Shown: positions 991 to 40,380, counted from the first letter of the stretch. The stretch is DNA of 64,000 bases from Mobula hypostoma (GCF_963921235.1 NW_026948113.1:248001-312000), one strand, 5' to 3'. The notes: generated by a model not told the origin, from the letters alone. A program made the numbers and translations.

Positions 991-3870
991 AATGCAATGT
1001 TAGCATTTATTTTGAAAGGATTAGAATATAAAAACAAGGATGTAATGTTGAGGCTTTATAAGGCACTGGTGAGGCCTCACTTGGATTACTGTGAACAGGC
1101 TTGGGCCCCTTATGATAAGATGTGCTGACACTGGAGATGGATTAAAGGAGATTCATGAAAATGATTCCAAGACTGATCAGCTTGTCGTATGAAGAGCGTT
1201 TGAAGGCCCTGGGCCTTTATTCACTGGAATTCAGAAGAATGAGAGCTGACCTAATTGAAACTTACTGAATGATGAAAGGCCCTAATAGAGTAGATGTGGA
1301 GCGGATGTTTTCTATGGTGGAGCCTAGGACCAGAGGAATAACTGAGCATCCTTTTAGAATGGAGATGAGGAGGAATTTCTTGACCCAGAGAATGGTGAAT
1401 CTGTGGAATTCATTGTTACAGGCAGCTGTGGAGGCCAAGTCTTTATAGAAACATAGAAACATAGAAAATAGGTGCAGGAGTAGGCCATTCGGCACTTCGA
1501 GCCTGCACCGCCATTTATTATGATCATGGCTGATCATCCAACTCAGAACCCCGCCCCAGCCTTCCCTCCATACCCCCTGACCCCCGTAGCCACAAGGGCC
1601 ATATCTAACTCCCTCTTAAATATAGCCAATGAACTGGCCTCAACAGTTTCCTGTGGCAGAGAATTCCACAGATTCACCACTCTCTGTGTGAAGAAGTTTT
1701 TCCTAATCTCGGTCCTAAAAGGCTTCCCCTCTATCCTCAAACTGTGACCCCTCATTCTGGACTTCCCCAACATCGGGAACAATCTTCCTGCATCTAGCCT
1801 GTCCAATCCCTTTAGGATCTTATTCGTTTCAATCAGATCCCCCCTCAATCTTCTAAATTCCAACGAGTACAAGCCCAATTCATCCAGTCTTTCTTCATAT
1901 GAAAGTCCCGCCATCCCAGGAATCAATCTGGTGAACCTTCTTTGTACTCCCTCTATGGCAAAGATGTCTTTCCTCAGATTAGGGGACCAAAACTGCACAC
2001 AATACTCCAGGTGTGGTCTCACCAAGGCCTTGTACAACTGCAGTAGTACGTCCCTGCTCCTGTACTCAAATCCTCTCGCTATAAATGCCAGCATACCATT
2101 CGCCTTTTTCACCGCCTGCTGTACCTGCATGCCCACTTTCAATGACTGGTGTATAATGACACCCAGGTCTCGTTGCACCTCCCCTTTTCCTAATCGGCCA
2201 CCATTCAGATAATAATCTGTTTTCCTATTTTTGCCACCAAAGTGGATAACTTCACATTTATCCACATTAAATTGCATCTGCCATGAATTTGCCCACTCAC
2301 CCAATCTATCCAAGTCACCCTGCATCCTCTTAGCATCCTCCTCACTGCTAACACTGCCACCCAGCTTCGTGTCATCTGCAAACTTGGAGATGCTGCATTT
2401 AATTCCCTCATCCAAGTCATTAATATATATTGTAAACAACTGGGGTCCCAGCACTGAGCCTTGCGGTACCCCACTAGTCACCGCCTGCCATTCTGAAAAG
2501 GTCCCGTTTATTCCCACTCTTTGCTTCCTGTCTGCTAACCAATTCTCCACCCACACCAATACCTTACCCCCAATACCGTGTGCTTTAAGTTTGCACACTA
2601 ATCTCCTGTGTGGGACCTTGTCAAAAGCCTTTTGAAAATCCAAATATACCACATCCACTGGTTCTCCCCTATCCACTCTACTAGTTACATCCTCAAAAAA
2701 TTCTATGAGATTCGTCAGACATGATTTTCCTTTCACAAATCCATGCTGACTTTGTCCGATGATTTCACTGCTTTCCAAATGTGCTGTTATCACATCCTTG
2801 ATAACTGACTCCAGCAGTTTCCCCACCACCGACGTTAGGCTAACCGGTCTATAATTCCCCAGTTTCTCTCTCCCTCCTTTTTTAAAAAGTGGGGTTACAT
2901 TAGCCACCCTCCAATCCTCAGGAACTAGTCCAGAATCTAACGAGTTTTGAAAAATTATCAATAATGCATCCACTATTTCTTGGGCTACTTCTTTAAGCAC
3001 TCTGGGATGCAGACCATCTGGCCCTGGGGATTTATCTGCCTTCAATCCCTTCAATTTACCTAACACCACTTCCCTACTAACATGTATTTCGCTCAGTTCC
3101 TCCAACCCACTGGACCCTCTGTCCCTTACTATTTCTGGAAGATTATTTATGTCCTCCTAAGTGAAGACAGAACCAAAGTAACTATTCAATTGGTCTGCCA
3201 TGTCCTTGCTCCCCATAATCAATTCACCTGTTTCTGTCTGCAGGGGACCTACATTGTCTTTACCAGTCTTTTCCTTTTTACATATCTATAAAAGCTTTTA
3301 CAGTCCGTTTTTATGTTCCCTGCCAGTTTTCTCTCATAATCTTTCTTCCCCTTCCTAATTAAGCCCTTTGTCCTCCTCTGCTGAACTCTGAATTTCTCCC
3401 AGTCCTCAGGTGAGCCACTTTCTCTGGCTAATTTGTATGCTTCTTCTTTGGAATTGATACTATCCCTAATTTCTCTTGTCAGCCACGGGTGCACTACCTT
3501 CCTTGATTTATTCTTTTGCCAAATTGGGATGAACAATTGTTGTAGTTCATCCATGCAACCTTTAAATGCTTGCCATTGCATATCCACCGTCAATCCTTTA
3601 AGTGTCATTTGCCAGTCTATCTTAGCTAATTCACGTTCATACCTTCAAAGTTACCCCTCTTTAAGTTCAGAACCTTTGTTTCTGAATTAACTATGTATAT
3701 TTAAAGCAGAGATTGACAGATTCTTGACTGGTCAGAGCATGAAGGGATAAGATATGGGGAGAAGTCAAGAGATTGGGGCTGAGAGGGAAAAGAATTAACC
3801 ATGATGAAATGGTGGAGAAGACTCAATGAGCTAAATGGCCTAATTCTGCTCCTATAGCTTATGGTCTTAA
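991..3870 (+). mobile_element. Older CR1 3' fragment (991-1445 and about 3692-3870) split by a younger CR1
   Basis: Degenerate RPHLDYC..WAP coding sequence breaks at gaggccaagtcttt (1445) and resumes at tatatttaaagcagagattgacagattcttg (about 3692). Confidence 0.75.
1446..3690 (-). mobile_element. Young 5'-truncated CR1 LINE with 520-aa open RT ORF (1543-3105)
   Basis: Uninterrupted [33 protein letters not shown] and KFADD motifs. (ATAGAAAC)n tail at 1445-1467. Frameshifted upstream coding in 3249-3608. Confidence 0.95.
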
Positions 3871-5928: not shown

Positions 5929-6273
5929 AGCAATAGTCATAGTCATAGTCATACTTTATTGATCCCGGGGGAAATTGGTTTTCGTTACAGTTGCACCATA
6001 AATAATAAATAGTAATAGAAATAGTAATAGTAATATTAATAGTAATAGTAATGGAAATAATAAATAGTAATAGAAAAATAGTAATAAATAGTTAAATAGC
6101 TATATGTAAATTATGCCAGTAAATTATAAAATAAGTCCAGGACCAGTCTATTGGCTCAGAGTGTCTGACTCTCCAAGGGAGGAGTTGTAAAGTTTGATGG
6201 CCACAGGCAGGAATGACTTTCTATGACGCTCTGTGCTGCATCTCGGAGAAATGAGTCTCTGGCTGAATGTACT
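5929..6273 (-). mobile_element. LINE (Rex1-like) 3' tail fragment nested in the hAT end, with (CATAGT)n and (AATAGT)n repeats
   Basis: (catagt)n tail plus tttatt at 5935-5960; AT-rich microsatellite 6000-6095; degenerate C-terminal coding 6130-6270. Confidence 0.6.
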
Positions 6274-7344
6274 ACACCCATCCTTTAGATAACTTTACCA
6301 TAATATCAGCTCAAAAATACAAGTCAAGCTCGTTAATCTTTTAATTAGCAAATTATGGCACTACATGAAAATTGTAACCGCACCTTCCTTGCTTTCACTG
6401 ATGCAAATTGGTCTATGACGTGATCAAAGTCAGTTTTTTTCAGTTTCTTCTCTTTCTACACTCAGCAGAGCAAGATCACAGAGTCTGCCTTGACCCATAG
6501 AGGCTCTCAAATATGAAAGTATTAGTCCTAACTTGCTGAATGATCTCTCACAGCTGGCGATGGAAACTGCGATGGTTAGCATTATCTGAATAGCAATGCG
6601 AAGATTGGGGAAGACGCTCTCATCTCCTTACTGAACAATAAATTCAAGAAGCTCTTCAGGTCTTGATATTTTCATGTTGACCTGCCTTGATAGCAACATC
6701 CTGCAGTCCAAAATTTCTTCATATAGCTGCTGTCCATCAACATCAGATCTGTACAAATCGCCCAAATTTTCGCACTTCTTCTTTCGGTCGTTACTGTCGG
6801 CGCCGTAACGCAGTCCCTCGACATCGAAAAGGAACCCGAACTTGGTGTCAGTGTCGTGCGAACCTTTCGTCCATTTATCTGTGAAGACGGTCGAGTGTTC
6901 CCTTCATGACTCTTTCCATGTCCTCTTTAGCTGTTAACCCAGCGTCTCTCGAGTTCGCATCAGCCATTCGTTTCTTTCGTCTCTGACGTCTTTCAACTTA
7001 TTCCATTCTTGACGAGACCGACTCCTTCTTCGAGTGACTTACTGACCAACACTTCTCTTTCATCATAAAAATGATCTCGGAAGGCTTTCAAATCCAGGGC
7101 AGTATTGTGGAAGTTCATGCGAGGATCCTTCAGCCTCTTTTGAATACGGTCAATGCGAATGAGTACTTTGTTCCAAAATTCTAGCAAAATCAGAAGATCG
7201 TAACTCAACATGCGGTTGTTCAGCTGCGTTGCTTCACTTCTTGTTTAACTGGTCTTGTTTTCATTGTCTATCATGTCCTGGAGAACTTGAAGTGTCTCCC
7301 CGAGGTACTTGTTGACAGACGTCACTGCTTCTGTCCTTACACTC

Positions 7345-8170
7345 TGTTACGTATCCCGTAACTGGGTTGCCAAACCAGCAGAAATGGATCACTCAGTTGG
7401 AGTCTGGATTACTAGAATTAAGAAAGTTTTATTAAAGAAACAAGCAACACAGTACTCTAATCAAAAGGATAATAAATGCAACAGTTCAGCAATGATAAAC
7501 ATACATGTACACAGAATTCAGATAACAGGATCAATCAAGCTCTGTCGTTGTCTAGGGGCAAATGACCAGTTTCAAAGTGACGCAAAGTTCAGTTCAATTC
7601 GCAGTAATCGTTGCCGTGGCGATGGACGGTGGGGGAAGGAGAGAGAGAGCAAAAACGAATGAATATTCAAACGGCTTCCACACACAGACCTTCGCAGTCA
7701 GCTGTCGGGCGAGTCCTTTGTGATGTCATCTGAGGTCACCGACCGTGACCCCTCCGTTTCCAGATACGATCGTTTCCCTGCGCTGAACCTGGCACCCAGG
7801 CAAGGGTGGACACACACCAGGTTCCCGTCGATCGTGCCTTTCCACCCTGTGCGTTTATGGCCCGATACTTCCCACCGACTTGTGAGAGACGCACGGCTTC
7901 CAGGGTCTTGTTACCTCGGGTGTCGTGTGTGTCCTGCCTTAGCAAACCTGTCCCTTTTTATCCCCCTGCTGGGGTATCGCCTGTCCATCACTTCAAACAG
8001 TTCAGGGTTCAAAGGGGGAGCCGCTCTTGACAGCTCTCCTTCCCCTTCATTACACATCTCCATTGCTGCTCCATTGTTTTCCTTATCTCTCTCTCCTGAA
8101 GACAGGTGGCAGACCAACTGCTGATCACACAGGACAGCTAACATCTTAATCTATGTGTATTCTTGTCACA
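7345..8170 (-). mobile_element. Solo LTR (Gypsy-like, 826 bp) inserted in the hAT transposase
   Basis: TGTTAC...GTCACA termini with a perfect 4-bp TSD ACTC (7341-7344 and 8171-8174). AATAAA lies near the minus-strand 3' end. Removing it restores the ETRWS-VRTEAV frame. Confidence 0.9.
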
Positions 8171-8949
8171 ACTCCACCTGGTTTCGGACTCTGATTTAAC
8201 GACCACAGGTACGGCGTTTTTGAGTTTTTTCCAGCGCTGTGTTGAACGGGGGGAAAAACACATAGAGAGCTTCGATGGTTCCAAAAAACGTGACCATCGT
8301 TGTATCCTGCTTGACTGCATGTGCACACACCAAGTTGAGTGAGTGACTGCCGCAATTCGCAAACACTGCCAGGTTGTTTTTCTCAGTTATTCTTTGATGA
8401 ACACCGCCTTGTGTCCAGCCATCACATCACCGTGGTCATTGCACAGTGGCCGACAATCTTGTAGCTCCATTTCATCCTTCTCTAGCTGTTTCAAGATGTC
8501 TTCAACCAAGCCCTCAGCATCCTTCTGGCTTATTTGGATAAAACCAAGGAAGGACACTCTAACACGGACTGTTTTCCTCTCAAAATCAACTTCCACATAC
8601 CTCACTACTTTTAACATCTGCTCAAGGTGTGCCTGATCTGGAGTCGAGTAGAACATGAGACCATAGTACAAAGTACTTGGCTTTACGAATGCTTCTCAGT
8701 AAACTCTGGCGAACAGTGGATGCCACCATGTGGATGAATTCGTTTTGGACACCGGGTAAAAGATAAGACGTGGATCCAGGATGACTTTTCAGATGAGTGA
8801 GGTGTTCTTTTTATGACAGGGTCAAAGATGGTCAGTAGTTTCAGTAAGCCAAGGAAATTTCCCACGTTGGAGTCATCGTCTAGCTGAAGTGAATCCCTGT
8901 GTCCTCGCAAAGCCGGGTTCTGAGTCCTAAGGAATTTTATGCAGTGAAG

Positions 8950-9536
8950 CAACACCCGCAACACGCTGGAGGGACTCAGCAGGTTGGGCAGCATCCGTGG
9001 AAATGATGAGTCAACGTTTCGGGCCGGAACCCTTCGTCACAACTGTAGAGGGAAGGGGCAGAGGCCGTATAAAGAAGGTGGGGGGAGGGTGGGAAGGAGA
9101 AGGCTGGTAGGTACCAGGTGAAAAACCAGTAAGGGGAAAGAATGGAGGGGGAGGGAATTACCGGAAATCCCAATGTCACTCTGCCCCCTCCCCCAGCTGC
9201 CTATCACCTCCCTCATGGTTCCGCCTCCTTCTACTACCTATTGTGTTTTCCCCTATTCCTTCTTCACCTTTCCTGCCTATCACTTCCCTGCTTCCCCTCC
9301 CCCACCCCTTTATCTTTCCCCTTACTGGTTTTTCACCTGGAACCTACCAGCCTTCTCCTTCCCACCCTCCCCCCACCTTCTTTATAGGGCCTCTGCCCCT
9401 TCCCTCTACAGTCCTGATGAAGGGTTCCGGCCCGAAACATCAACTCATCATTTCCACAGATGCTGCCCGACCTGCTGAGTTCCTCCAGCGTGTTGTGAGT
9501 GTTGCTTTGACCCCAGCATCTGCGGAGTATTTTGTG
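8950..9536. mobile_element. Penelope-like fold-back insertion (about 200-bp inverted arms) in the hAT transposase
   Basis: 8950-9145 is a near-identical reverse complement of about 9310-9505. A 14-bp TSD tttatgcagtgaag / tttatgctgtgaag flanks it. Removal restores NLHSIKFLRTQN. Confidence 0.8.
9409..9446 (+). ncRNA. Minimal type I hammerhead ribozyme motif (partly decayed) in the Penelope-like repeat
   Basis: CAGUC-CUGAUGA-A-GGG(UUCCGG)CCC-GAAA-CA-UC-AACUC. The catalytic core is intact; stem I and the palindromic stem III loop carry CpG-type decay relative to the consensus GAAACGUC-GACUG seen in other copies. Confidence 0.55.
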
Positions 9537-10709
9537 TTTATGCTGTGAAGGTTTCTCGTCAAGATATCACACCACTTCTGCTTCTCCTTCTCAATCTGTG
9601 ACTGAAATACCACGTCAATACCTCTTCTGTTTCCAGCTAAATTTCTTTCCATTTCTTTCCACTGTGTGAAGCATTCCCGATGATTCTTGGCATTTTCATG
9701 AACACCACTCCTTTCAGGTGCTTTCCACTAGTTGAATCCACTTTCCTGCTCCAATGAGGATTGATGGTCTGACCGGGAATAGAGAAGACAACAGATACAA
9801 AATGCAGACTTTTTAAAAAGGGGAATAGACCAGTCATGAGTGAGTCACTTCCTCACCACGACCATTTCCCAATTTCCACTTGAACCAAGTTTTGTTCATT
9901 GAGCAGTTATTTGTTGGTAGGAAAGGTCCCTCACTGTCTTGGAAATACTTCAAACCCAGCTTTATTATTTTTGTTCTCAACGCGTCAGGCAGAATTGCTT
10001 TTCCAGTATCCTTGTCGAACTTCAGAAGTCCAGTGTCATGCTGTTCAATCACTTCTGGTATGACAGTTCGAGGCTCTTTGACACCATCTAGTTCACTGGA
10101 TTCAGTGTCATCAGGTTCAATCTCATCAGGTAAAATCTCGTCAATAAACTCAACATTATCATCACCACCATTGTCTTCCTCTCCTGTCATGTCCACGTTC
10201 TCTGTGGCAGCCTCACTCTTAATTTCGTCATACTCGGATTTAACTGACTTGACTTCCTCCTCGGCTTGTGATGCATTTGTACTTGATCCACCTTTGGATT
10301 CTAACAAACTTGTAGCAGGTGCAGGCGACTCCAAGGAACGTGTCGAACTACTTGTTCCAGGCTTTTCAAAGAAGGGCATGAAGAACTTGCTCGACTTCTT
10401 GGCTTCCTCTGCATCCCACTTTTGTCTCTTCTGTCCTTCAGCTCCACTTTGCTTCTCTTTGTCAAGAAACATTTCAAGGTCTTCTTGCACAATGCTCTGA
10501 AATAAGGCCATCCTAGTGCTTATCACCCCCTTCAAGTGGTGCCCAAGGCACGTGGCATATCTGCCATACCTTAGATATGCCACTGTTTGGCTATCTTTAT
10601 TTGCTGTGGCATAGAATATGTCAGCAGGGATGTCACATTATAGCTTTCTAAAACATTTGTTAGACATGCTTGAGGTATCGTGCACAGTTTTGATGGTAAA
10701 AGTTATTTC

Positions 10710-11060
10710 TCAGACCCTCCTTCTGGTTCCCTTCTTCCTCCCTTTATTCCATGGTCCACTATCCTCTCCTATTCAATTCCCTCTTCTTCAGCCCTTTACC
10801 TCTTCCACTTACCACCTCCAAACTTCTCACTTTATCGTCCAGACCCACCCTCCACCCTCCCCCTCACTTGGTCTTACCTTCCAGCTTGTACAACTCCCCC
10901 TCTCCCCCCTACCCACCAACATCTTATTCTGGTCTCTGGCCTCTTTCCAGTCATGATGAAGGGTTTCAGCCCGAAACATCAACTGTTCATTCCCCTCCTT
11001 AGATGCTGCCTGACTTGCTGAGTCCCTCCAGTATTTTGTGTGTGTTTCTCAAGATTTCCA
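10710..11060 (+). mobile_element. Penelope-like 3' repeat fragment
   Basis: C/T-rich tract, then cagtcatgatgaagggtttcagcccgaaacatcaactg and the gatgctgcctgacttgctgagtccctccagt family signature. Confidence 0.7.
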
Positions 11061-12459
11061 GCGTTGGCAGAATCTCTTGTATCTCTAAATCTCTTACCTC
11101 TTGCCCTAAGCCCATGTCTTCCAGTCATAAGCATCTCCTCTATAAAAAATATTCCCTCCTCCTTATCCTATCTATGCCCTTCAAATTCAGGTATCACCTC
11201 AGCCTCTTCCTCTCCAAGGAAAACAAGTTCAGCCTATCCAGTCTCTCCTCATAACTAACAACTTCCTTGTGAATCCCCTCTGCTCCCTCCTGTGTGCAAT
11301 CACATCCTTCCTGCAGTGTGCCCACCAGAACTGCAGGACCCCTCTACCTTTAGACACTTTCACTATGGAATATCTTGCTTTAATATTGTGTTAATAGAGG
11401 AGTTGTTAATATTTCTTTTGTTGATCATGTTACACTTACGTAGCATGAACATCACTGAGCATATAGGTATTACGTACCAGTCATGCCTGTATGTTCCCTG
11501 TATTTTTCTGTGCACAGGCTCAGACTGCTTCATCATCCTTAGTGGTTGCAAATGGAATTGAACATTACGAGATTATCTGTGGACATCCCAAATTGATCTT
11601 GCGATGGAAGTAATATTAGACTGAGATTCTTATCTGATCTGGAGCCTGCTGAGCTTCAGGATGCTGGTTATTGCTGAATACATGAGTGCATGTGTCTTTC
11701 TTGAGGCATCAACAGCCTCTGAAGCATTCAAATTCTCCTGTTGCCTCTGCCTCCAGACAAATTACATATGCTATCCTTATTCTTTTCACACACCTACCTT
11801 AAAAGTTATAGAAAGATACAGCAATGGAAGCATGACAGTCAGTTTGGATGCACTGGCCCTTTGGCCCTGTGCGTCCACACTGTCCACCAACTACCCATTT
11901 ACACTAATCCTGTATTAATTCTAGTGTTGCTAATACACCACACATTCTCACCTAAAGAGACGAGGCAACTTATAATGACAACTTAACCTACTAACCCACA
12001 CATCTTTGGGATGTGGAGGAAATTGGAGCACCAGGGGAAAAGCCACACCTAATATTCTCTCTTCTGCCATCCCCGCCCCCCCACCCCCACCAACACTGGG
12101 TCAAAGATACAAAAGCCTAAAGTCACATATCTCCAGGTGCAAAGACAGTTTCTGCTGTGCTGTTATAGGACTATTGAATGGTCACCTAGAATAATAAGAT
12201 GGACTCCTGCATCTGATTATCTGCATGCACCACACTTTCTCAGTACTGTAACTGTACCATTTTATACTGCACTCTGTTATTACAGTTTTCCCTTCTACTA
12301 CCTCAGTGTACTGTTGTAACGAAATGATCTCTGTACGGCTGGCATGAACATTACTGACCACATACCAGTCATGCCTGAATGTTCTCAGTTCAGATTTTCA
12401 TTGTATCTCAATACATGTGAGAATAATAAACCAATTTATTATTGGTTTGGTTACTATAT

Positions 12460-12955
12460 TGGTGGGGACACTATAGAGAGAGCACAGTGGAGATTTACAA
12501 GGATGTTGCCTGGATTGGGGAGCATGCCTTATGAGAATAGGTTGAGTGAACTTGGCCTTTTCTCCTTGGAACGATGGAGTATGAGAGGTGACCTGATAGA
12601 GGTGATGAGAGGCATTGATCGTGTGTATAGCCAGGGACTTTTTCTCAGGGCTGAAATGGCTAACATGAGCGGGCATCATTTTAAGATGCTTGGAAGTAGG
12701 TACACGGGGGATGTCAGAGGTAAGTTTTTCACACAAAGAGTGGTGGGTGCTTGGAATGCACTGCCAGCGACAGTAGTAGGGGCAGATACAATAGGGTCTT
12801 TTAAGAGACTCTGAGATACGTACATGGAGCTGAGAGAAATAGAGGGCTCTGCGGTAAGGAAATTCTAGACAGTTTCTAGAGTAGGTTGCATGGTCGGCAC
12901 AACATTGTGGGCCGAAGGGCCCGTAATGTGCTGTAGATTTCTATGTTTCTAAGTT
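12460..12955 (+). mobile_element. CR1 3' fragment
   Basis: ERAQWRFTRMLPGL...FFTQRVVGAWNALP motifs with a ttctatgtttcta tail. Confidence 0.85.
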
Positions 12956-15900
12956 TCTATTATCAATTTACCCAAATAGTCACAGTACAAACTCCACACA
13001 GATAGTTTCTGAGAGCAGGATTGAACCTGGGTCTCCAGTGCTGTCAGGCAGGTTTCCACTAGCTGCGTCATTGTGTTGCCGAATCCCTCAACCCAGTGAC
13101 CATGGCATCCACTAGCAGTTACGGCCCAGAATGATTCTGAAGGTGTGAGTGCGAAGGCAACCTTGACCTTGACAATGAGAGCATGACATTTATTTGCCTG
13201 TGGTGAAGCTAACTTGCACATACCTGGGTCATCAGGAAGCATTTGGGTGCAAGTCCCCATAAACCCTAAAGACACAAGAGACTGCAGATTCTGGAATAAA
13301 CAAGCTGCTAGAGGAACTCAGCATGTCAGGTAACGTGAGTGGAGGAAAGGGGGTGGACATTGTTTTGGGCCAAGATCATCCATCAGGGCCAAAAGATAAC
13401 CAGTATAAAGATGGGAGAGGGTGGGCTGAGACAGGAGCTGGCAAGCAACAGGTGGATCAATTAGAGTCAAGGAATGGCTGGAGTTTTTGTGATTAATTCA
13501 GGAGGACCAGGATAGATACATACCAAGAAGAAGTATACTAAAGGCAGAATGATGCAACCATGGCTGACAAGGGAAGTCAAAACCAACATAAAATGCATGT
13601 GTCAAAGTTATCAACCTCCAGCAAGGGCCTCCTCTCTTAAATGTGTCTGGGCTTCAGGACTTTATACAATTAAGCTATAACTCTGCTCAGTGTATCAGGG
13701 AACCCCAGCCTAGTCAGACTCTCCTATCCAGCTATCCAGACATGCCAATATCTCTGTAAGTATCCTCTAGACTGCTGTAGTCGGGAGGTCAGAACTGCAC
13801 ACAGTTCTCCGTCTGTGCACTATCTATCCAATCAATGCCCCTGATAGGTTTGTACATATCAAGCTTCTCTACTCCAAGGAAAATAAACCCAGCTCATCCA
13901 TGATGCTCTATCCCAGACCACATCCTGATAAATCTCTCCTGCACCCTTTCCGGTGTAATCACACCCATTGCAAGATGTATCCAGTGATCAACAACGTTGT
14001 TTTGCAGGCAGCTCACCAAACTTCGAGATACCCTAGTAGACATACTTCTTCTGAAATGCTATTGCTACGGTCCGCAGCCTGTAATTTCCCTTTAATGGAT
14101 GTGCTGTCGAACTGACTAAATGAACTGGCACTTTTGTATTCTCCAGGGGATTCGGCAAATTAGACTCTAGAGATTGCTTCTACATCCGGGACAGCAAACC
14201 GCTGGCTGAGAATGCTGCGTAGAGGCCAGATAACAGAAGATGAACCTGTGCTCGGCTCCATTATTCTGTGACATTTAAAACATCAAGCAGGATTAAAATT
14301 GTCGAGGAATGGGGGATAGAGGGCAGTGGGTGACTCGATTAGGGAGCACTCATTCTGGAGTCCTGATTGGGGTTGGAGCAAACGGCTGAACCTTGTGTTG
14401 TGAGTAGCTGTCAGGGTGTAAGTGGTGGTGGGGGGACGGGGGCGTTGGTGGTAGAGATGGGAGGAAATGCTGGAGGAGATGGAGGTAATGAACGGGAGGT
14501 GATATTGAATGATAGGAGTTGTATGGAGAAAGGTAAATGGCAAGGTTTCTGAGAAATGGAAGAATAAACAGCTGGTTGAGGATTGTAGTGCTTACCGTCT
14601 CATGATGAAGGCAGTGGTCAGGATTTAATTAAAATAAGGCAGGAAGGTTTAAAGGTTTTGTTAAGTTTTGGATGTGGACTTGTTTCTAGCATCAATCCAA
14701 ATAGACTACCTAAGGATTTGAAAAAAAAGCATTTGAAGATAGTGTGGACACAAAACTTTTAAAAGATGGGACACTCTCAGTATTTTGTAAAGATAGTAAG
14801 CAATGTGAAAAAGCTTTGGGGTTAAATGTTTGAAAAGGTTTCATAATAGAGTATGAACAGATATATTATTGGTGTTGATTAATGATGATGGGAAAAAAGT
14901 TGCAGGGAGTTTTAGGTTATATTGAGGTTATATGAGTTATGGTTCAAGTCCATGGTCTTGAGATATTTTCAAGAGCAGAAGTTTGGTCATGTAGCAGCTG
15001 TGTGCAAGCGTAAAAAGCGGTGTGCTAGAGGTGGTGAAGAGCATGGTTATGGCAATTATGCAGAAGGTGTTGGCTAATATGTAGTAACTGTGGAAGAGAG
15101 CATAGCTCAGCTTATGCCGGGTGTCCTGTATATCAGAAAGCTGTGGAAGTGTAATATGTTCAGGTGAAAGTGGGCATATCATATGCAGAGGCTCTGCAGG
15201 AAATACAGAAGACAGTGTCAAAGGGACCTATTAATATCGAGATAGTTTAGGGACAGTGCGTAAAATGCATGATTTTATAACAAAGGATTAATTTATAAGC
15301 TAAAATTTGTCACTTTCATGGTAGATGTGGTAAATTAAATAGGACAAACAGAAAATAGGACAGAAAAAATTTATATTAAAAGCTGCAGAAGAACATCCAG
15401 AAATAAAACACTTACCGTAACTCTGTAAGTTATTAATGATGCCTTACAGGAGGAGTAAATAATGTTTAGACTTCAAAGGAGGGTTGTAAATGGTTTTCTA
15501 ATATTACTGTAATACCAGAAGCCCATTATCTAATGGACAAGAATTTAAGGCATTTATTAAAGATTTACCAAATAGAACTGATATTATATGTGTACAGGAA
15601 ATCTGGTTAAAATCTTGTCTATGTTTTAAGATACAAAGTTATGTTGATATAAGATGTGATCGGAAAATGGGTAATGGAGGAATAGTAGCTACCTTTATCA
15701 AAAATGAGACAGCTAATAGACTTATGGAAATAAGAGTTGTTTATGAGTCAATTGTGATTGAAATTTGGGGAAAGAATAGTAAAGTTCAGATAATTTTTTA
15801 TTACCCTTATGAAAGTTTAATGCCTAATATATTGGAAAGTGTGGGTGGAAATTGGGAAAGATATGGTTGAAACGTGTGGGAATTTCAATGCTCATAGTAC

Positions 15901-24630: not shown

Positions 24631-24638
24631 TTAGGATT
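24631..24638 (-). CDS. B2M: Beta-2-microglobulin exon 3 coding part (G|AA TCC TAA = E-S-stop); whole exon 24616-24638
   Basis: Acceptor ttttcctgccttcacttacag|AATCCTAAGCTGTTGCGCCACAG|GTAAGC. A tiny stop-containing exon 3 is the typical B2M layout. Total CDS is 52+279+8 = 339 nt = 112 aa plus stop. Confidence 0.88.
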
Positions 24639-27009: not shown

Positions 27010-27288
27010 CCAGTTTAACAGTTTTGTTAACGCCATTGTGCAGCACCCTGCAGGCATACTGCACTCCTTCCTTGGGAGAGATTTCAACATAACTGGTCAA
27101 TTTGAATTTCCAGTTTTGTTCAAAGCTGATGTCAGATTGTTTTGTGTTTGGTATCAGAAGACCATCCTGCAGCAATTCCAGCTTGATGTTGGGTGGGCTG
27201 AATTCCTTGGCATGACAAAGGAGAACGTTGTCTTCACCTGTCACGAGGGGTTTGTAGGTGTAGACGTTGACCTGTGGTGAACTTACAT
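27010..27288 (-). CDS. B2M: Beta-2-microglobulin exon 2 (C1-set Ig domain)
   Basis: Acceptor ...gtgtatctgcag|AT and donor CTG G|GTGAGT, 279 nt. Reads (N)VSSPQVNVYTYKPLVTGEDNVLLCHAKEFSPPNIKLELLQDGLLIPNTKQSDISFEQNWKFKLTSYVEISPKEGVQYACRVLHNGVNKTVKL. C25, P32, D53, F56, W60, F62, Y78, C80 and H84 fall at the same mature positions as in human beta2m. Confidence 0.97.
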
Positions 27289-34214: not shown

Positions 34215-35560
34215 CAGGTCCAATAGGGAGAGAGGGGTTCCATCAGACATTAGATTAACTGGAAGCTCACTCTGTGAGGGGGAGGACATGGAACATTAAG
34301 TTTAATGGGGCCAGCTTTCAGGGAGAGGGCATGGTGCTTTGGACAACACTGCTTTCAAATACAATGCGCATGGGCATAGGGTCTAAAGTGACTGGGTAAG
34401 GGCTTTCCAAGATGAAGGGGGCACAGGACATTAATGGGAACACATTCAGAGGGGGGCAGAAGGTATTAATGGTGTGTCTTTCCAGAGGGGCAGTGCGCTA
34501 ATGGGGCAGGTATTCTGAGAGTTAAAGACATGGGTTTCTGGAGTAATGGGTGTCTCTTTCAGAAACAAAGGACACACGGACAGCAGAGGGAATGGGAAGT
34601 GCACGCGCCAGACATCGGGCACTGAGGTTGATGAGTAATTTGGGGCTCTTACAGAGAAAGTGCGGAAGCCCACTGCATCTAATAGAAGGAACAAGAGACC
34701 ACTCAGACCTTTGAATTTACTTTCCATCTCAACACTATTCATCCACATTCAGTTCTATGCTACAGCTCTTTTCCCCGATTCCCCCTAGCCCCAGGAACAG
34801 TTTCCAACTCCAGGGTCAGTGGGTCTCACTTACAAATGGGGCAAAAGTGGGGCACAGAGAATGGGGTTAACTGACAGGCCGTCAAGAAGGAAACAACAGC
34901 CGGGCATTCAGGATAATGGGAGGGATTCTTTCCAAAGGTGATGCAGGTTGAAGACATGGGGCAGATGGCCAGAGGTAGTGTTCTCTCCGGGAGAGAACAA
35001 ACGTCAGGTTTTAAGGTGATGGCAGGGCATGTGACACTGGAACAGGGATTCCTTCCAAAAAAGGAGCATGCATGGGATACTGGGACAAATAACATTTGAT
35101 GGGTCTGAGGGAGAGGGAAGTCTGGTTAAGTGTCTTTTGGAAAAGAGATCATGGGACATTGGGATTTAAGGGGTGTGGGGGCTCCTGCCCGGGGAATTAG
35201 CTCTAATCGGAGGGGGACACGAGGTATTGGTATTAATGAGGACAACTTCTTTTGAGAGAGGGTAAGGGTCATTAAGACCAGTGGGAAGGGCAGAGAGAGG
35301 GAATGGGACATTATGGAAAGGTGTTTCTCCAGAGGTGGAATTGAGCATTACACCCAGTGGGAAGGATTGCTTTCCAGAGCGCTGTGGGGGTATTGGGTGT
35401 AATGCGAAGCTCTCCTTTCAAGAGCGTCATGGGGCAATAGGGCTAATGGGTAAATCTTTCAGAGAGCAGAGAGGGGACGTGGGTGTAACAGGTTAGGTGG
35501 AGGACTCTTTGAGTCTTGGGGCATTAGCGTAAATGGGGAGGTCGCCTTTGATACGAAGAC
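34215..35560. repeat. Ancient degenerate G-rich tandem repeat in B2M intron 1
   Basis: Recurring taatggg...ctttc(c)agag...gggg motif at roughly 35-45 nt spacing. Confidence 0.55.
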
Positions 35561-35691
35561 TTAAGAATCCGGACCTAGGGTATTCTTTCAGTGAGCGGGC
35601 ACTGGAGTATAGGGCCAAATAGGACCCGAGAATTTTCCCAACCCTGCCTACTCCCTACAGACCCAAAACGACAAATTTACTCAGTGCTAGA

Positions 35692-35824
35692 GTAAGTCAG
35701 TAGGTCAGGTAGCATCTACGTAGAGGAATAAGTTGACGTTTCGGGCTGAGATCCTTCATCAATCTCGACCCGAAAGATAGACGGTTTATTCCTTTCCACA
35801 GACGCTGGCTGACCTGCTGAGTTC
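35692..35824. mobile_element. Penelope-like fold-back (imperfect arms of about 60 bp)
   Basis: gtcagtaggtcaggtagcatct...ttgacgtttcgggctgagat is inverted relative to atctcgacccgaaag...gctgacctgctgagttc. Confidence 0.65.
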
Positions 35825-35905
35825 TTCAGGCACTTAATGTATCAATATTTCAATCACTCAGTATTTCCAGCAGTTGCAAAATTTCGAGTTTATAAATTTA
35901 CTTAC

Positions 35906-35957
35906 TCGCCACACAAATCAACCCAAGAGAGAGCAGGATCAGAACACGTAGCATCAT
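35906..35957 (-). CDS. B2M: Beta-2-microglobulin exon 1 (signal peptide MMLRVLILLSLGLICVA plus the first base of the next codon)
   Basis: Minus strand reads ATG ATG CTA CGT GTT CTG ATC CTG CTC TCT CTT GGG TTG ATT TGT GTG GCG A|GTAAGT: a hydrophobic 17-aa leader and a perfect phase-1 donor that joins in frame to exon 2. It lies directly below a CpG-rich promoter. Confidence 0.92.
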
Positions 35958-36014
35958 TTTCGGACACACGGCACACACCAGCTACTAGAAAGGAATTCGC
36001 TTCTTGGTCTCCGC

Positions 36015-36252
36015 AACTGATCACTCGCGCTTGCACCCTCAGATTATGCGAAACAACCGGCCGCCCGGTACCAATAAGAAAACGGCACTCCGCCCTTTTG
36101 CCTCGGCACAACCAATGGTAATATTTAGAAAATACGCATCATCAGTCTCCGGGTGAAAGATCTCGGTAGAGTTTGCGGACCGGGAAACGAGGGCGGATCG
36201 TTCAGACGCGACCCTCGGCGATCTCTTAAGAAAATTTAAGAAGGAAAGTCAC
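36015..36252 (-). promoter_or_regulatory. B2M proximal promoter with X1/X2-Y module, GC boxes, CCAAT, TATA-like element, Inr and kB/ISRE-like site
   Basis: Sense strand: X1X2 CCCGGAGACTGATGATG (36137-36153); 20 nt later Y box ATTGG (36112-36116); GGGCGG at 36090-36095 and 36061-36066; second ATTGG at 36071-36075; CATAAT at 36043-36048, 30 nt before Inr TCAGTT (36015-36020); GTGACTTTCC at 36243-36252. CpG-rich. Confidence 0.8.
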
Positions 36253-37179
36253 TCTGCAATTCCGACTGCCTGTGTCACAGCATTGACAAATCTACTTTAG
36301 GCGCAGTATGAAACATCACAAGCAAAACATTAGAGTGATTTGCTGGAATTTCATAAATCATGTATTTGTGGAATAATTATTCCGAGGCAGTTGGATTCTG
36401 GCCAATTCTAGTGTTTTCATAGGACGGTGAGATTCAGTATATCCGTTACTCGTCAGAGCTCGGTTACACCTTATCCATTTAAGATGCCTCAGATCATACC
36501 ATAATAATGCTAAAAAATTAACTAGGTAGTTACCATTTTGCAGTCTCCTGTGACAATAAACTTGCATTGTACAAATGTACTGAAAATGTACAAATGGCGT
36601 GAATATTAGATTTTTTGCATCAGCAGCACAGTACATAAGTTGACATGAACTTAAATTAACATGCATTTTATGTAACTTACACGATAAAATAAACATCATA
36701 AACAAAACGATATTAATGCAAATCGAGAGAGAAAAAGACATTATAGGAAGATAAATACGGAAACGAAATATGATTCAGATTATTCAATAATGCAAGGACA
36801 AATGGACTTTTTGTCGTAAGTGTATACTTGTAAAATTTATGTTTTGTTGCGTATGCTGCTTACATGATGCTATTTGCCTGTAATACCTTTACACATAAGC
36901 TTTTATTGCACTTGTGTATATCTGTACTTGCGCATATGACAACAAACTCGAATTATACATTAAGTTAGACATTTATGTTATAAACTCTCACCTAGTTATT
37001 ATCCTTTTGCAATGGCCCGGGTTACCCAACTATGATGCTAAAACAAAATCTCAGCTAGGGTTTATCCTTTGGCAATGGCTCTGGTTACCCAATATTAATG
37101 TTAAAAACTGCTCTAAACATTTCTTGTTTTGCATTTCTTCTTACAGGGAACACAGGGTTTGCAGACCTGGGATTAATAT

Positions 37180-37440
37180 CCGATGAGTCACGCAGCCTGT
37201 TACTGACACAAGTCGCCGCCCTCCCGTTCAGCTGCGCAAATGCGCATGCTATGTTTATACTAATTTCACAAGTCGCTTAGAGAGAAATCTGACGGATTCC
37301 CGGAATTACCGTTTCAGGCTCCAGTCCAAGTGACTTTTGTTCCTACACTCTGAACCCAACATAGCCCGGTCATCGCTAAGAGTTCAACTGGCCTGCGCTT
37401 TCGACTCTGGTCTTACCGCAGGAGAACCTGAAACTTCGGT
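37180..37440. promoter_or_regulatory. Second CpG-rich regulatory cluster (distal B2M enhancer or divergent promoter)
   Basis: TGAGTCA (AP-1) 37184-37190; GC box about 37216; TGCGCATGC (NRF1-like) 37241-37249; perfect GAS/ETS TTCCCGGAA 37297-37305; ISRE-like GAACCTGAAACT 37424-37435. Confidence 0.55.
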
Positions 37441-39189
37441 AAATCCCGGCACAGTGCTTAGATTGATATTGACGAAATCCTGTCAAATCTGAACACGTTT
37501 ATTGTTATAAACAATAAAACAAATGTGAAACTGAATCTACCTGCGACAGAATCTGCGGCCCCAAAGTCAATTTACAGTGTGATTGAAGCTGAACATATTG
37601 TTAATCGCGCAATCACTTCAGTTGAGGCCTAAATGTGTCAGTCTTCTTTATTTTCAATTTTCAATGCTCAGAATTTAGAGAATATTGGAGACTCAAGAAC
37701 AATATCGTCCCTACTGCAGCAGTTTCAAAATTGTAAAGGAGGGGAGGAAATTGAATCCAGGGGATTTCCAGAACTGAAAACAGAATCTCCTAAAATTCCT
37801 AAGTCGTGTCTACGGAGAGATAAACACAATTAATGTTGCAGATCGAAACATTTTAAATGTCGGGGAATTTATGGTTTTGGATCGCGTTCAATTTTTTTTT
37901 TGGTAAATTGTACACTTGAAGTTGTACTAGACGCTGGTGAGGTCGCATTTGGAATATTGTGTTCAGTTTTGGTTACCCCAGAATAGAAAATATGTTGTTA
38001 AACTGGAAAAAGTGCAGAGGAGACTTACCAGGGTGCTGCTGGGACTCCGGAGACTGAGTTATGGAGTTAGGTTGAGCAGGTAGGGACCTTTTACACTGGA
38101 GCATATGAGACTGGGGGTGGTCTTATAGAGGTATTTAAAAGCATGAAGTGCACAGATAGGGTCAATCCATACAGGATCCACTTCCATGCTGTATGACTAT
38201 GACTCTCAGTAATACTTTATTCCCCTCTCTCTCTCAATTTCTGGTATGTGTTTTGTGCCCTCTTTTGAGAAGGAAGATGACTTACACTGTCAGTTCCTTG
38301 TACTCTTTTTTTAAGGACATGAGAAATTGCTTCAGGAATGGGCAATCCAGCCTTCTAAACCTGCTTCCCCAATTATTAAGGCCAGCAGAGGTCTGACACA
38401 GAGAAATAGATGAGGCCTGGAGCAGATCACCCATACTGAATGACAGGGCAGGCTTAAGAGGGTGTGGCCTATCCTGCTGCTATTTTCTTATGTTCCAGAT
38501 CATGGCTCATATTCTAGTTCAGTAGTATGTTCCAGCATGAACCCTGAACGGTCTATTTCTGTGCCTTAGTACCCTATCACTCTATGGATGTACATTTGTT
38601 CTAATGAACAGCAGAACAAATTTCCTCTCACTCTCCACTTTTAGTAATTGTTCTTCCTTGTCAGCTGTGTGTGTATTTTGCTGCCATTCCTTGCATCATT
38701 GTGGAGTTATGATTACCGTAGCCAGAGATTTTTGTGTATTTTCTGACTTATGGAGTTTTTTGCAAAGTACAGCACAGAAACAGGCCCTTCAGTCCATCTA
38801 GACTGTGCCGTACCAATTAAACTGCCTAGTCCTATTGACCTGTACCAGGACCACAGCCATCCAAACCTCTACTATCCAAGTACCTTTCCAAACTTCCTTT
38901 AACGTTGAAATCAAGCTTACATGCACCACTTGTGTGTGGCAGCTCGTTCTGCACTCTCACAACCTTCAGAGTGAAGACGTTTCCTCGCATGTTCCCCTTG
39001 TATTTAAGGCAGAGATTGATAGGTATCTGAGTAGCCAGGGCATCAAAGGTTATGGTGAGAAGTGGGGGGGGTGGAGTGGGACTAAATGGGAGAATGGATC
39101 AGCTCATGATAAAATAGCGGCGCAGACTCGATGGGCCAAATGGCCGACTTCTGCTCCTTTGTTTTATGGTCTTAAACTCTTCACCTTTC

Positions 39190-40380
39190 ACTCTTAATCC
39201 ATCATCTTTCATTGTAATCCCACCCAATCTCAGCGGAAAAGACTGCTTGCATTTACCCTATCTATACGACTCATATTTTTGTATACCTCGATCGAATCTG
39301 CCCTCAGTCTTCTACATTCCAGGGAATAATGCCCTGACCTAGTCAATCTGTACTTATTACTCAGGTCCTCCAGTCCCAGCAGCATCCTTGTAATTTTTCT
39401 GTACTCTCTCTCAGCCTTATTTACATCCTGTAGGTAGGTGACCAAAACTGCACACAGTACTCCAAATTAGGCCTCACTAGGCCTCATATACAATTTCAAC
39501 TTAACATCCCATCTCCTGTACACTGCACTTTGGCATATGAAGGCCAATGTGCTAAAAGCTTTCTTTATGACACTATCTACCTGTGATGCCATTTTCAACA
39601 AATTATGGACCTGTATTCCCAGATCCCTTTGTTCTATCGCATTCAGTGCCTTGCTGCTCACCGTGTAAGACCTACCCTGGTTGGTCCTACTGAAGTGCAA
39701 CACCTCGCACTTGTCTGCATTAAATTCCATCTGCTATTTTTCAGTCCCATTTTTCCAGCTGGTCCAGATCCTGCTGTGAGCTCTGATAGTCTTCCTCGCA
39801 ATATTGGTGTCATCTGCAAATTTGCTAATCTAGTTAGCCACATTCTCATCCAGATGATTGATATAGATGACAAATAATAACAGACACAGCAGTCACCGGT
39901 ACTCCACTAGTCAGAGTCCTCCAGTCTGGCTTCACCCCCAAAGCCAATGTCTAATCCAATTTACTAACTCATGTTCAATGTCAAGCAACTGAACCTTACT
40001 GACCAACCTCCCATGTAAGACATGTCAAATGCCTTGCTAAATTCAATATAGTCAATATCCATTGCCTTGCCTTCATCAACTTTCCTGGTAGTTTCCTTGA
40101 AAAACTCTGTAAGTTTTCTTAGACATCACCTACCACTCTCAAAGCTATGCTGATTATCCCTGATCATTCCCCATCTAACCAAATACCTATATATTCAGAC
40201 CCGAATACCTTTCAATAACTTTCCTACTATGATGTTAGACTCACCAGCCTATAATTTCCTGGTTTAGTTTTAGGGCCTTTTAGAGTGGAATAACATTAGC
40301 AGTTCTCCAACCCTCTGGTACGTCACCTGTCGCTAAGGATGATTTAAATATCTCTGCTAGGACCCCTGCAATTTCTGATT
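39190..40380 (-). mobile_element. Degenerate CR1 RT fragment
   Basis: MEFNADKCEVLHF...RDLGIQVHN and YRKITRMLLGLEDL motifs in shifted frames. Confidence 0.85.

What the first reader, a model, noticed from the sequence alone, without database searches (positions are those of the whole stretch)
36112..36175. MHC-type SXY enhanceosome module conserved in a cartilaginous-fish B2M promoter
Seen in sequence: on the B2M sense strand, CCCGGAGACTGATGATG (36137-36153) is followed exactly 20 nt later by ATTGG (36112-36116). A candidate S box CAAACT (36170-36175) lies 16 nt upstream of the X box. Established knowledge: the mammalian B2M and MHC class I/II promoters use a spacing-constrained S-X1X2-Y module bound by RFX, CREB/ATF and NF-Y to recruit NLRC5 or CIITA. 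The human B2M X box, as I recall it, is CTTGGAGACAGGTGACG, about 21 nt before ATTGG. Inference: NLRC5/CIITA-style co-regulation of beta2m dates back to the common ancestor of jawed vertebrates. The S-box call is the weakest part.
Basis: partly seen in the sequence, partly recalled or inferred. Interest (0 to 1): 0.7.

Follow-up and report, generated by a model that had tools for sequence, protein, structure and literature searches.

The report
Conserved SXY module in ray B2M promoter
The switch region in front of a devil ray's beta-2-microglobulin gene holds the same spaced set of docking motifs (S, X1, X2, Y) that turns on MHC genes in mammals, and two sharks, a skate and a sawfish keep it too, so a known regulatory design now reaches back to the shark-ray ancestor.

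Summary
On the minus strand, CAAACT (36175-36170), CCCGGAGAC-TGATGATG (36153-36137) and ATTGG (36116-36112) lie 16 nt and 20 nt apart.

The gene is B2M. Exon 1 plus exon 2 translate 110/110 identical to the Mobula hypostoma B2M-like protein. RNA contigs place the main transcription start at about 36024-36031, so the module sits at roughly -85 to -150.

I fetched B2M promoters from a sawfish, a skate and two sharks.
- All keep S-16 nt-X1X2-20 or 21 nt-Y.
- Ray-versus-shark identity is 0.80-0.94 in the motifs and 0.28-0.56 in the spacers.
- The S-X block is the only significant ray-shark similarity in 700 bp upstream.

The spacings equal those published for mouse NLRC5 targets (16 bp; 20-22 bp). 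The X1 core GGAGAC matches human B2M.

It is therefore a real, constrained SXY-type module, a new member of a known kind. Factor binding, NLRC5/CIITA recruitment and an origin in the jawed-vertebrate ancestor remain inference; no chimaera or bony-fish promoter could be fetched.

Other notes of this scan report SXY-like modules elsewhere in this genome (TAP1, PSMB9, class I and class II regions). I did not check them.

The parts
36170..36175 (-). S-like box, CAAACT
   Evidence: Letters read. It lies 16 nt upstream of CCCGGAGAC in all five species (the Rhinoraja distance was read from the alignment). Ray-versus-shark identity is 0.94. The published S-X distance in NLRC5 targets is 16 bp.
36145..36158 (-). 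X1 box: TTTCA + CCCGGAGAC, an RFX-type site with core at 36153..36145
   Evidence: CCCGG[A/T]GAC is present in all five species. Ray-versus-shark identity is 0.85. The GGAGAC core is identical to human B2M as printed in primers. The fit to the RFX consensus GTNRCC-N-RGYAAC comes from my own knowledge and was not tool-tested.
36137..36144 (-). X2 box, TGATGATG (a CRE/ATF-like half-site, degenerate in this species)
   Evidence: The aligned position reads TGACG in Pristis, Rhinoraja and Heptranchias, TGATG here and TGATA in Stegostoma. Ray-versus-shark identity is 0.81.
36112..36116 (-). Y1 box, ATTGG (inverted CCAAT; NF-Y type), the Y of the SXY module
   Evidence: It lies 20 nt after the X 17-mer here, in Pristis and in Heptranchias, and 21 nt after in Rhinoraja and Stegostoma. 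Stegostoma reads ACTGG. Published X-Y distance is 20-22 bp.
36090..36095 (-). GC box, GGGCGG (Sp1-type), between Y1 and Y2
   Evidence: GGC.G is kept in all five species. Ray-versus-shark identity is 0.73. Letters read.
36071..36075 (-). Y2, a second inverted CCAAT box (ATTGG), proximal
   Evidence: ATTGGT is invariant in all five species. It lies about 40-47 nt upstream of the mapped 5' ends.
36230..36250 (-). Degenerate ISRE/IRF-like stretch, GACTTTCCTTCTTAAATTTTC (weak call)
   Evidence: The sharks carry perfect TTTCNNTTTC cores 60-71 nt upstream of X1. No ray promoter matches the core. The position corresponds only loosely in the alignment.
36024..36031 (-). Main transcription start zone
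   Evidence: An X3 contig runs from exon 1 to 36024 and then into Illumina adapter. An X9 contig ends at 36029. X2 summed depth falls from about 35,000-40,000 to 77 upstream of the 36014-36064 bin. The 5' end of a stingray transcript contig (L005) aligns to 36031.
35906..36031 (-). B2M exon 1: 5' UTR of about 68-74 nt plus the signal peptide, ATG at 35957
   Evidence: The peptide MMLRVLILLSLGLICVA equals the P0001 N-terminus. The donor is GTAAGT. Spliced contigs join 35906 to the start of exon 2.
27010..27288 (-). B2M exon 2 (Ig C1-set domain)
   Evidence: Pfam C1-set, E = 4.9e-16. The best homologues are elasmobranch B2M. The joined CDS is 110/110 identical to P0001.
24631..24638 (-). Candidate coding start of exon 3: AATCCTAA, which completes ...E-S-stop
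   Evidence: Pattern search behind an AG acceptor with a polypyrimidine tract. It fits the P0001 C-terminus ...KLES. It was not confirmed by reads.
38029..38057 (-). 3' end of a minor upstream exon, spliced to the acceptor at 36226-36225 and reading through the SXY promoter
   Evidence: The loose end of X1 contig 7 matches 38057..38030 exactly. The donor is G|GTAAGT and the acceptor TTTTCTTAAG|A. In X2 the extended form has contig depth 77, against about 35,000-40,000 summed depth over exon 1.

Best explanation
This is the proximal promoter of the devil ray B2M gene. It contains a true counterpart of the mammalian MHC class I/B2M 'SXY' enhanceosome platform.

Reading 5' to 3' on the gene's strand, the layout is: an S box (CAAACT); 16 nt; an RFX-type X1 site (TTTCA-CCCGGAGAC) abutting an ATF/CREB-type X2 half-site; 20 nt; an inverted CCAAT Y box. 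A GC box, a second CCAAT box and the transcription start about 40-47 nt further on then follow.

The likely mechanism is as in mammals. An RFX5-type complex on X1, a bZIP factor on X2 and NF-Y on Y bind cooperatively on one face of the helix. Together with the unidentified S-box factor they form a platform that recruits an NLR co-activator (NLRC5-like, possibly CIITA). This would give high, MHC-coordinated B2M expression.

Shown here:
- the motifs exist;
- they lie upstream of the mapped TSS;
- their sequence and spacing are under constraint across the shark-ray split;
- the spacing equals the published mammalian values.

Inferred: which proteins bind, and that an NLR co-activator is recruited. 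I put that last step at about 0.5.
For: (1) Gene identity and promoter position. The CDS is 110/110 identical to the M. hypostoma B2M-like protein. Transcript 5' ends lie at 36024-36031 and RNA depth falls about 500-fold upstream of them. The module therefore lies at about -85 to -150.

(2) Conservation in five elasmobranchs (three batoid orders, two shark superorders). S-X is 16 nt in all five and X-Y is 20 or 21 nt.

(3) A test that is a priori with respect to the four comparison species.

(4) Ray-versus-shark identity is 0.94 (S), 0.85 (X1), 0.81 (X2) and 0.80 (Y1), against 0.28-0.56 in the spacers.

(5) In all six ray-versus-shark blastn comparisons of 700 bp upstream, the only significant HSP is the S-X block, extending through Y in some pairs, with E from 4e-4 to 1e-11.

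(6) Ludigs et al. 2015 found S and Y at 16 and 20-22 bp from X in NLRC5-occupied promoters, including B2m, which is RFX5-dependent (PMC4374748).

(7) Human B2M carries GGCTTGGAGACAGGTGACGG upstream of exon 1. That matches 13 of 17 positions of the sawfish X box, with an identical GGAGAC core and TGACG.

(8) CIITA and NLRC5 orthologues are reported in whale shark (PMC8455134).

(9) A related organism's RNA contig over 35997-36226 differs only in spacers: 36131 A>T and +C after 36053.
Against: - No binding or reporter data exist for any cartilaginous fish.
- The window's own X2 reads TGATG, not TGACG, and Stegostoma reads TGATA. ATF/CREB binding may therefore be weak in this species.
- Stegostoma Y1 is ACTGG, which breaks the CCAAT pentamer.
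- The ISRE that accompanies SXY in mammalian class I/B2M promoters is perfect in the sharks. No ray promoter matches the ISRE core.
- The mammalian S-box consensus is held only as a figure, so sequence-level S homology could not be tested. The S-binding factor is unknown even in mammals.
- In salmon and zebrafish, IRF1 rather than the enhanceosome appears to drive IFN-gamma induction of MHC genes (PMC7573153).
- Only elasmobranchs were compared. No holocephalan or bony-fish promoter could be fetched.
Confidence: 0.7

Rival explanations
1. It is a conserved RFX/NF-Y platform without an NLR co-activator role. The module binds RFX-family and NF-Y proteins and supports constitutive B2M transcription. 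Immune induction in elasmobranchs would run mainly through IRF/STAT sites, as proposed for teleosts. The NLRC5/CIITA dependence would be a later, or only tetrapod, refinement.
For: Salmon RNA-seq found no RFX5 or NFYA/C transcripts during IFN-gamma induction. Zebrafish MHC II induction runs through IRF1 and the ISRE (PMC7573153). The sharks keep a perfect ISRE next to the module. B2M mRNA is very abundant in the laid runs, which fits strong constitutive drive.
Against: The S box is the element that confers NLRC5 specificity in mouse. It is the best-conserved hexamer here and keeps an exact 16-nt distance. That is hard to explain if no S-dependent co-activator were involved. CIITA and NLRC5 orthologues exist in whale shark.
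Confidence: 0.17
2. It is a generic conserved core promoter. The conserved blocks would be ordinary CCAAT, GC-box and bZIP sites plus binding sites for unrelated factors, and the likeness to SXY would be coincidental.
For: CCAAT and GC boxes are common in TATA-poor promoters. There are two of each here. X2 is degenerate in two species and Y1 in one. The X1 half-site GGAGAC departs from the RFX consensus at two positions (my own knowledge of the consensus).
Against: Four features coincide with the mammalian module: element order, orientation, S-X = 16 and X-Y = 20-21. The X1 core and the TGACG next to it equal the orthologous human gene's X box. Such a match in the same gene's promoter is very unlikely by coincidence. 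The composite occurs once in 64 kb, with 0 expected.
Confidence: 0.1
3. It is a chance resemblance, or the blocks are kept only because cartilaginous-fish DNA evolves slowly.
For: Mobula and Pristis align over about 560 bp of promoter at 69% identity. Batoid-only comparisons therefore cannot separate constraint from slow drift.
Against: Between rays and sharks everything except the module has diverged beyond detection. Spacers are at 0.28-0.56 identity while motifs are at 0.80-0.94. The permutation test gives 0 of 20,000.
Confidence: 0.03

Closest known systems
Mammalian B2M promoter SXY module (human B2M, mouse B2m; NLRC5- and RFX5-dependent)
   Same: It is the same gene, with the same order and orientation S-X1-X2-Y. 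S-X is 16 nt and X-Y is 20-21 nt, against 16 and 20-22 bp published. The X1 core GGAGAC and the adjoining TGACG are as in the human sequence printed in primers. The module lies in the proximal promoter, upstream of the TSS.
   Different: Three of the first ten X-box positions differ from human (CCCGGAGACT against CTTGGAGACA). The ray's X2 is TGATG. There is an extra GC box and a second, invariant CCAAT box between Y and the TSS. No ray promoter matches the ISRE core, and no consensus NF-kB site was found within the scanned span around the module. Binding and transactivation are untested.
[quoted passage not shown]
   Same: It has a composite, spacing-constrained S-X-Y architecture. Spacing is conserved while the spacer sequence is free, which is the signature of cooperative assembly on one face of the helix.
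   Different: Whether the S box here is of the NLRC5 type or the CIITA type could not be decided, because the consensus logos are figures only. The trans-acting factors were not examined in this genome.
Chicken B2M promoter with X and Y boxes (Riegert et al. 1996, PNAS 93:1243; cited in PMC4046983)
   Same: It is a non-mammalian B2M gene whose promoter carries MHC-type X and Y boxes.
   Different: The text of that paper was not held, so sequences and spacing could not be compared. The present case is about 450 million years more distant from mammals (my own estimate) and includes a conserved S box.
Teleost MHC class I promoters with W/S, X2 and Y motifs (reviewed in PMC7573153)
   Same: Enhanceosome-type motifs are present in fish antigen-presentation gene promoters.
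   Different: Those are class I heavy-chain genes of bony fish. Their function is questioned there, with IRF1 dominant. Here the gene is B2M in cartilaginous fish, and motif spacing was measured across five species.

Membership tests
MHC-type SXY enhanceosome module | X1 box: an RFX-type site at the centre of the module | tested here: met
   CCCGG[A/T]GAC is kept in five species. The GGAGAC core is identical to the human B2M X box printed. This is met at the sequence level only; RFX binding was not tested.
MHC-type SXY enhanceosome module | X2 box: a CRE/TRE-like half-site (TGACG) directly 3' of X1 | tested here: inconclusive
   TGACG is at the aligned position in Pristis, Rhinoraja and Heptranchias. 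The window has TGATG and Stegostoma TGATA. The position is conserved, at 0.81 identity.
MHC-type SXY enhanceosome module | Y box: an inverted CCAAT 20-22 bp downstream of X | tested here: met
   ATTGG lies 20 nt (three species) or 21 nt (two species) after the X 17-mer. The published range is 20-22 bp. In Stegostoma the pentamer is ACTGG.
MHC-type SXY enhanceosome module | S box at a fixed distance of about 16 bp upstream of X | tested here: met
   CAAACT (CAAAGT in Pristis) lies 16 nt before CCCGG in all five species, at 0.94 identity. The published distance is 16 bp.
MHC-type SXY enhanceosome module | S-box sequence matches the NLRC5-type (or CIITA-type) consensus | not testable with these tools
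   The consensus logos of Ludigs et al. 2015 are figures and are not held as text. My recollection of mammalian S boxes is only a lead.
MHC-type SXY enhanceosome module | Location in the proximal promoter, upstream of the TSS of an antigen-presentation gene | tested here: met
   The TSS zone is 36024-36031, so the module lies at about -85 to -150. The gene is B2M.
MHC-type SXY enhanceosome module | Cooperative binding of RFX5/RFXAP/RFXANK, CREB/ATF1 and NF-Y, and recruitment of NLRC5 or CIITA | not testable with these tools
   This needs EMSA, ChIP and reporter assays. The only indirect support is that CIITA and NLRC5 orthologues are reported in whale shark (PMC8455134).
Mammalian class I/B2M promoter architecture (enhancer A/kB + ISRE + SXY) | A functional-looking ISRE just upstream of SXY | tested here: inconclusive
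   Perfect TTTCNNTTTC cores are present in both sharks. No match is found in the window, Pristis or Rhinoraja, where only degenerate T-rich stretches occur, e.g. 36250..36230.

The most novel reading that the evidence does not exclude
B2M would already have been wired into the same S-X-Y enhanceosome as the MHC genes in the last common ancestor of cartilaginous and bony vertebrates. In this reading the S-16-X-20/22-Y geometry and even the GGAGAC...TGACG X box have been kept in one orthologous promoter for more than 400 million years. The conserved CAAACT S box would be the docking determinant for an ancestral NLRC5-type co-activator, which would give a handle for identifying the still-unknown S-box factor.
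Probability: 0.45. Interest if true: 0.55.

Novelty: new member of a known kind. Interest (0 to 1): 0.42.

Why it matters
The SXY enhanceosome is the textbook case of a spacing-constrained composite promoter element, and it couples B2M to MHC expression in mammals. This work shows that the B2M orthologue of rays and sharks keeps the same elements at the same distances while the spacer sequence drifts freely. That pushes firm comparative evidence for the B2M module down to the shark-ray ancestor. It also makes its presence in the jawed-vertebrate ancestor a concrete claim that can be tested.

The work gives a five-species footprint that names the bases to mutate. It also shows that the S box, whose binding protein is still unknown in mammals, is the most strictly kept hexamer. 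Elasmobranch sequences could therefore serve as bait for finding that factor.

The general idea is already accepted for vertebrates, with evidence from mammals, chicken B2M and teleost class I genes. This is a solid extension rather than a surprise.

Tried and rejected
- **Orthologue DNA that could not be fetched.** Look-ups for Mobula birostris, Hypanus sabinus, Heterodontus francisci, Cetorhinus maximus, Scyliorhinus torazame and a frog (Staurois) returned no DNA because the files are too large.
- **Exact k-mers shared by all five promoters.** This was too strict, because single substitutions in Rhinoraja X1 and Stegostoma Y1 break the words. Only three shared 6-mers were found (10 of 300 shuffles do as well). 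I replaced it with pairwise local alignment and a column permutation test.
- **More copies of the X box in the window.** Only two 3-mismatch matches turned up, at chance level (13 of 100 shuffles). There is no second module in these 64 kb.
- **Metagenome scan for the S+X composite.** No match.
- **Rfam over 35300-38300.** No RNA family, so no structured RNA explains the conservation.
- **Papers not held.** Ohta et al. 2011 (nurse shark B2M-MHC linkage), Dijkstra and Yamaguchi 2019, and Riegert et al. 1996. An earlier description of a shark B2M promoter therefore cannot be excluded.
- **Sequencing runs.** None was on record as RNA. Laying the runs nevertheless showed spliced, adapter-terminated B2M contigs.
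- **Chance and slow drift.** Both were considered and rejected.

Full report
**Observation**

Read on the minus strand, the window holds CAAACT at 36175..36170. Sixteen nt further on comes CCCGGAGAC-TGATGATG at 36153..36137. Exactly 20 nt after that comes ATTGG at 36116..36112.

The composite GGAGACNGATGA-N(20-24)-ATTGG occurs once in the 64 kb window and in none of 100 dinucleotide-preserving shuffles.

**The gene**

- A signal-peptide exon starts at ATG 35957 and ends at a GTAAGT donor (35905).
- About 8.6 kb downstream lies an Ig C1-set exon, 27288..27010 (Pfam C1-set, E = 4.9e-16).
- The best database relatives of that exon are elasmobranch beta-2-microglobulins.
- Joined, the two exons translate 110/110 identical to P0001, 'beta-2-microglobulin-like [Mobula hypostoma]'. 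A candidate third exon at 24638 supplies the last two residues and the stop.
- No other cellular gene is evident in the window. I did not search the other long open frames; several look like LINE or reverse-transcriptase fragments.

**Is the module upstream of the transcription start?**

The runs that hold this stretch were not labelled RNA, but they behave as RNA.
- Contigs of X1, X3 and X9 end at exon 1's last base (35906/35904). Their continuations read the reverse complement of the start of exon 2, so they are spliced.
- One X3 contig (depth about 4,900) runs from 35906 to 36024 and then straight into Illumina adapter sequence. That marks a cDNA 5' end.
- An X9 contig ends at 36029.
- In X2 the summed contig depth is about 35,000-40,000 over 35912-36013, about 2,600 in the 36014-36064 bin and 77 upstream of it.
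- A stingray B2M transcript contig (L005) has a 73-nt 5' UTR whose first base aligns to window 36031.
- Skate SMART-seq contigs (L006-L008) carry template-switch-oligo remnants. By eye, their first transcript bases fall about 30-35 nt downstream of the second CCAAT box in the Rhinoraja promoter. Blastn aligned only the coding part there, so this point is weaker.

Contigs cannot give exact starts, but all lines agree on a main start zone at 36024-36031. Counted from about 36027, this puts Y2 at about -45, Y1 at about -87, X at about -110 to -126 and S at about -145. That is a proximal-promoter position like that of mammalian SXY modules.

I obtained genomic B2M loci for four more species:
- Pristis pectinata, a sawfish (L001);
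- Rhinoraja longicauda, a skate (L004);
- Heptranchias perlo, a sevengill shark (L002);
- Stegostoma tigrinum, a zebra shark (L003).

With the window these cover three batoid orders and both shark superorders.

| Feature | Result across the five promoters (alignment A2) |
|---|---|
| S | CAAACT; CAAAGT in Pristis |
| S-X spacing | 16 nt in all five |
| X1 | CCCGG[A/T]GAC, preceded by a conserved TTT |
| X2 | [T/C]G[A/G]TGA[C/T]; TGACG in three species, TGATG in the window, TGATA in Stegostoma |
| X-Y1 spacing | 20 nt in three species, 21 nt in two |
| Y1 | GATTGG in three species, CATTGG in the window, GACTGG in Stegostoma |
| Further blocks | a GC box, then ATTGGT, invariant in all five |

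Of these, 21 are invariant across all five, against 7.7 expected from the density of invariant columns in the 185-column core. None of 20,000 permutations reaches this.

| Region | Ray-versus-shark identity |
|---|---|
| S | 0.94 |
| X1 | 0.85 |
| X2 | 0.81 |
| Y1 | 0.80 |
| S-X spacer | 0.56 |
| X-Y spacer | 0.36 |
| Y1-GC spacer | 0.28 |

In unbiased blastn comparisons of 700 bp upstream of the ATG, every one of the six ray-versus-shark pairs has a single significant HSP. It is always the S-X block (window 36184..36139 for Mobula). In some pairs it extends through Y1 and Y2. E-values run from 4e-4 to 1e-11.

Slow drift is therefore not the explanation. Outside the module the promoters have diverged beyond detection. 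Mobula and Pristis still align over about 560 bp, which is why batoid-only comparison would not have been enough.

An RNA contig from a related organism (X2) covering 35997-36226 differs from the window only at 36131 and by one inserted base after 36053. Both lie in spacers. This has low power but is consistent.

**Comparison with the known system**

- Ludigs et al. 2015 (PMC4374748) defined the module occupied by NLRC5 in mouse T cells. B2m is listed as an RFX5-dependent target that carries the module.
[quoted passage not shown] They showed that spacing is critical and that the S box confers NLRC5 specificity. The elasmobranch values, 16 and 20-21, coincide. Motif boundaries in that paper are defined in figures I could not read, so the coincidence may not be exact to the base.
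- Two papers print primers for the human B2M exon-1 amplicon. Human B2M therefore reads GGCTTGGAGACAGGTGACGGTCC just upstream of exon 1.
- The sawfish X box (CCCGGAGACCGATGACG) matches the human CTTGGAGACAGGTGACG at 13 of 17 positions. The GGAGAC core and TGACG are identical.
- From my own knowledge of the RFX consensus (GTNRCC-N(0-3)-RGYAAC), the elasmobranch TT[Y]RCC-C-GG[A/T]GAC is a fair dimer site. That would explain the conserved TTT upstream of CCCGG. This was not tool-tested.
- On the trans side, CIITA and NLRC5 orthologues with NACHT domains are reported for whale shark (PMC8455134).

**Prior art**

SXY is described as present in mammalian MHC I, B2M, TAP and LMP2 promoters and as "highly conserved across vertebrates" (PMC7281430; PMC7573153). 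[quoted passage not shown] W/S, X2 and Y motifs are reported in many teleost class I promoters.

I found no held paper that describes an SXY module in a cartilaginous-fish B2M promoter. Several key papers are not in the library, so a prior description cannot be ruled out.

This scan's own notes report SXY-like modules elsewhere in the same genome. They include one upstream of a leader exon about 29 kb beyond this window's end, and others at TAP1, PSMB9, a class I region and class II genes. These are unchecked leads, not evidence. If true, they fit a genome-wide co-regulated set.

**Mechanism and caveats**

The pattern of conserved boxes, free spacer sequence and fixed spacer length is what cooperative assembly of several DNA-binding complexes on one helical face predicts. 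It matches the mammalian enhanceosome in order, orientation and geometry. I therefore hold, at about 0.7, that this is a homologous SXY platform bound by RFX-type, bZIP and NF-Y factors. I put the step that it recruits an NLRC5-type co-activator at about 0.5.

Points against:
- This species' X2 is TGATG rather than TGACG.
- Stegostoma's Y1 breaks the CCAAT pentamer.
- The sharks have perfect ISREs (TTTCGCTTTC and TTTCACTTTC) 60-71 nt upstream of X1. The three batoids, including the window, have no match to the ISRE core.
- Work in salmon and zebrafish suggests IRF1 can do without the enhanceosome for IFN-gamma induction.
- Nothing here tests binding, and no chimaera or bony-fish promoter was compared. 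The dating to the jawed-vertebrate ancestor rests only on the elasmobranch-to-human/mouse likeness.

**Verdict**

The cis-module reading is supported, and the deeper evolutionary and co-activator inference is plausible but untested. The finding is a new member of a known kind and of moderate interest.

Noticed in passing
window 38029-38057 (minus strand) joined to 36224; intron 38028..36225: There is a minor B2M transcript form. An upstream exon ending ...CAGCACCCTG with donor GTAAGT is spliced to an AG acceptor at 36226-36225, so the RNA reads through the whole SXY promoter into exon 1. It is seen in contigs of two organisms (X1, X2). In X2 the extended contig has depth 77, against about 35,000-40,000 summed depth over exon 1. 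The start of the upstream exon was not mapped. It may be an alternative distal promoter or a cryptic donor within a repeat.
   Followed up: partly
window about 35694-35830 (intron 1 of B2M): This is a highly repeated element. Hundreds of RNA contigs at 85-95% likeness pile up here, with summed depth of about 6,000-14,000. The minus strand carries a hammerhead-like TGATGA...CCCGAAAC core (about 35766-35737). Rfam at gathering threshold found no family.
   Followed up: partly
L002:2640-2975 (Heptranchias perlo): About 340 bp of tandem repeats (units built from GGAGTGGACTGAGTGTAAAGCC and GGAGTGAGAGC) lie between the conserved promoter and the B2M start codon. They push the SXY module to about -500 from the ATG. 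Either the 5' UTR is very long or an unannotated intron or TSS shift exists.
   Followed up: no
L002:2427-2441 and L003:2715-2729; L002:2617-2625 and L003:2913-2921: Both sharks carry a perfect ISRE (GAGTTTCGCTTTC and GAGTTTCACTTTC) upstream of S and an ETS/PU.1-like AGGAAGTGA downstream of Y2. The three batoid promoters lack both. This suggests that the interferon and ETS inputs to B2M were rewired in rays.
   Followed up: partly
P0002 against window 27010-27288: The Mobula birostris 'B2M-like' protein is only 85% identical to this window's exon 2, although the two species share a genus. The gene is either evolving fast or the two are different paralogues or lineages.
   Followed up: no
window 35977, 35993, 36053, 36131: RNA contigs of a related organism (X2, partly X9) differ from the window in four places: A>T at 35977, G>A at 35993, one inserted C after 36053, and A>T at 36131. 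All lie in the 5' UTR or in promoter spacers, and none in the S, X or Y motifs.
   Followed up: no
window 1546-3156 (minus strand), 1-918 (plus strand) and elsewhere: Long open frames elsewhere in the window look like LINE or reverse-transcriptase debris, for example a 537-aa frame at 1546-3156. B2M seems to be the only cellular gene in the 64 kb. Scan notes place MHC class I-like genes 29 kb and 107 kb beyond the window's end. If correct, that fits the reported linkage of B2M to the MHC in sharks.
   Followed up: no
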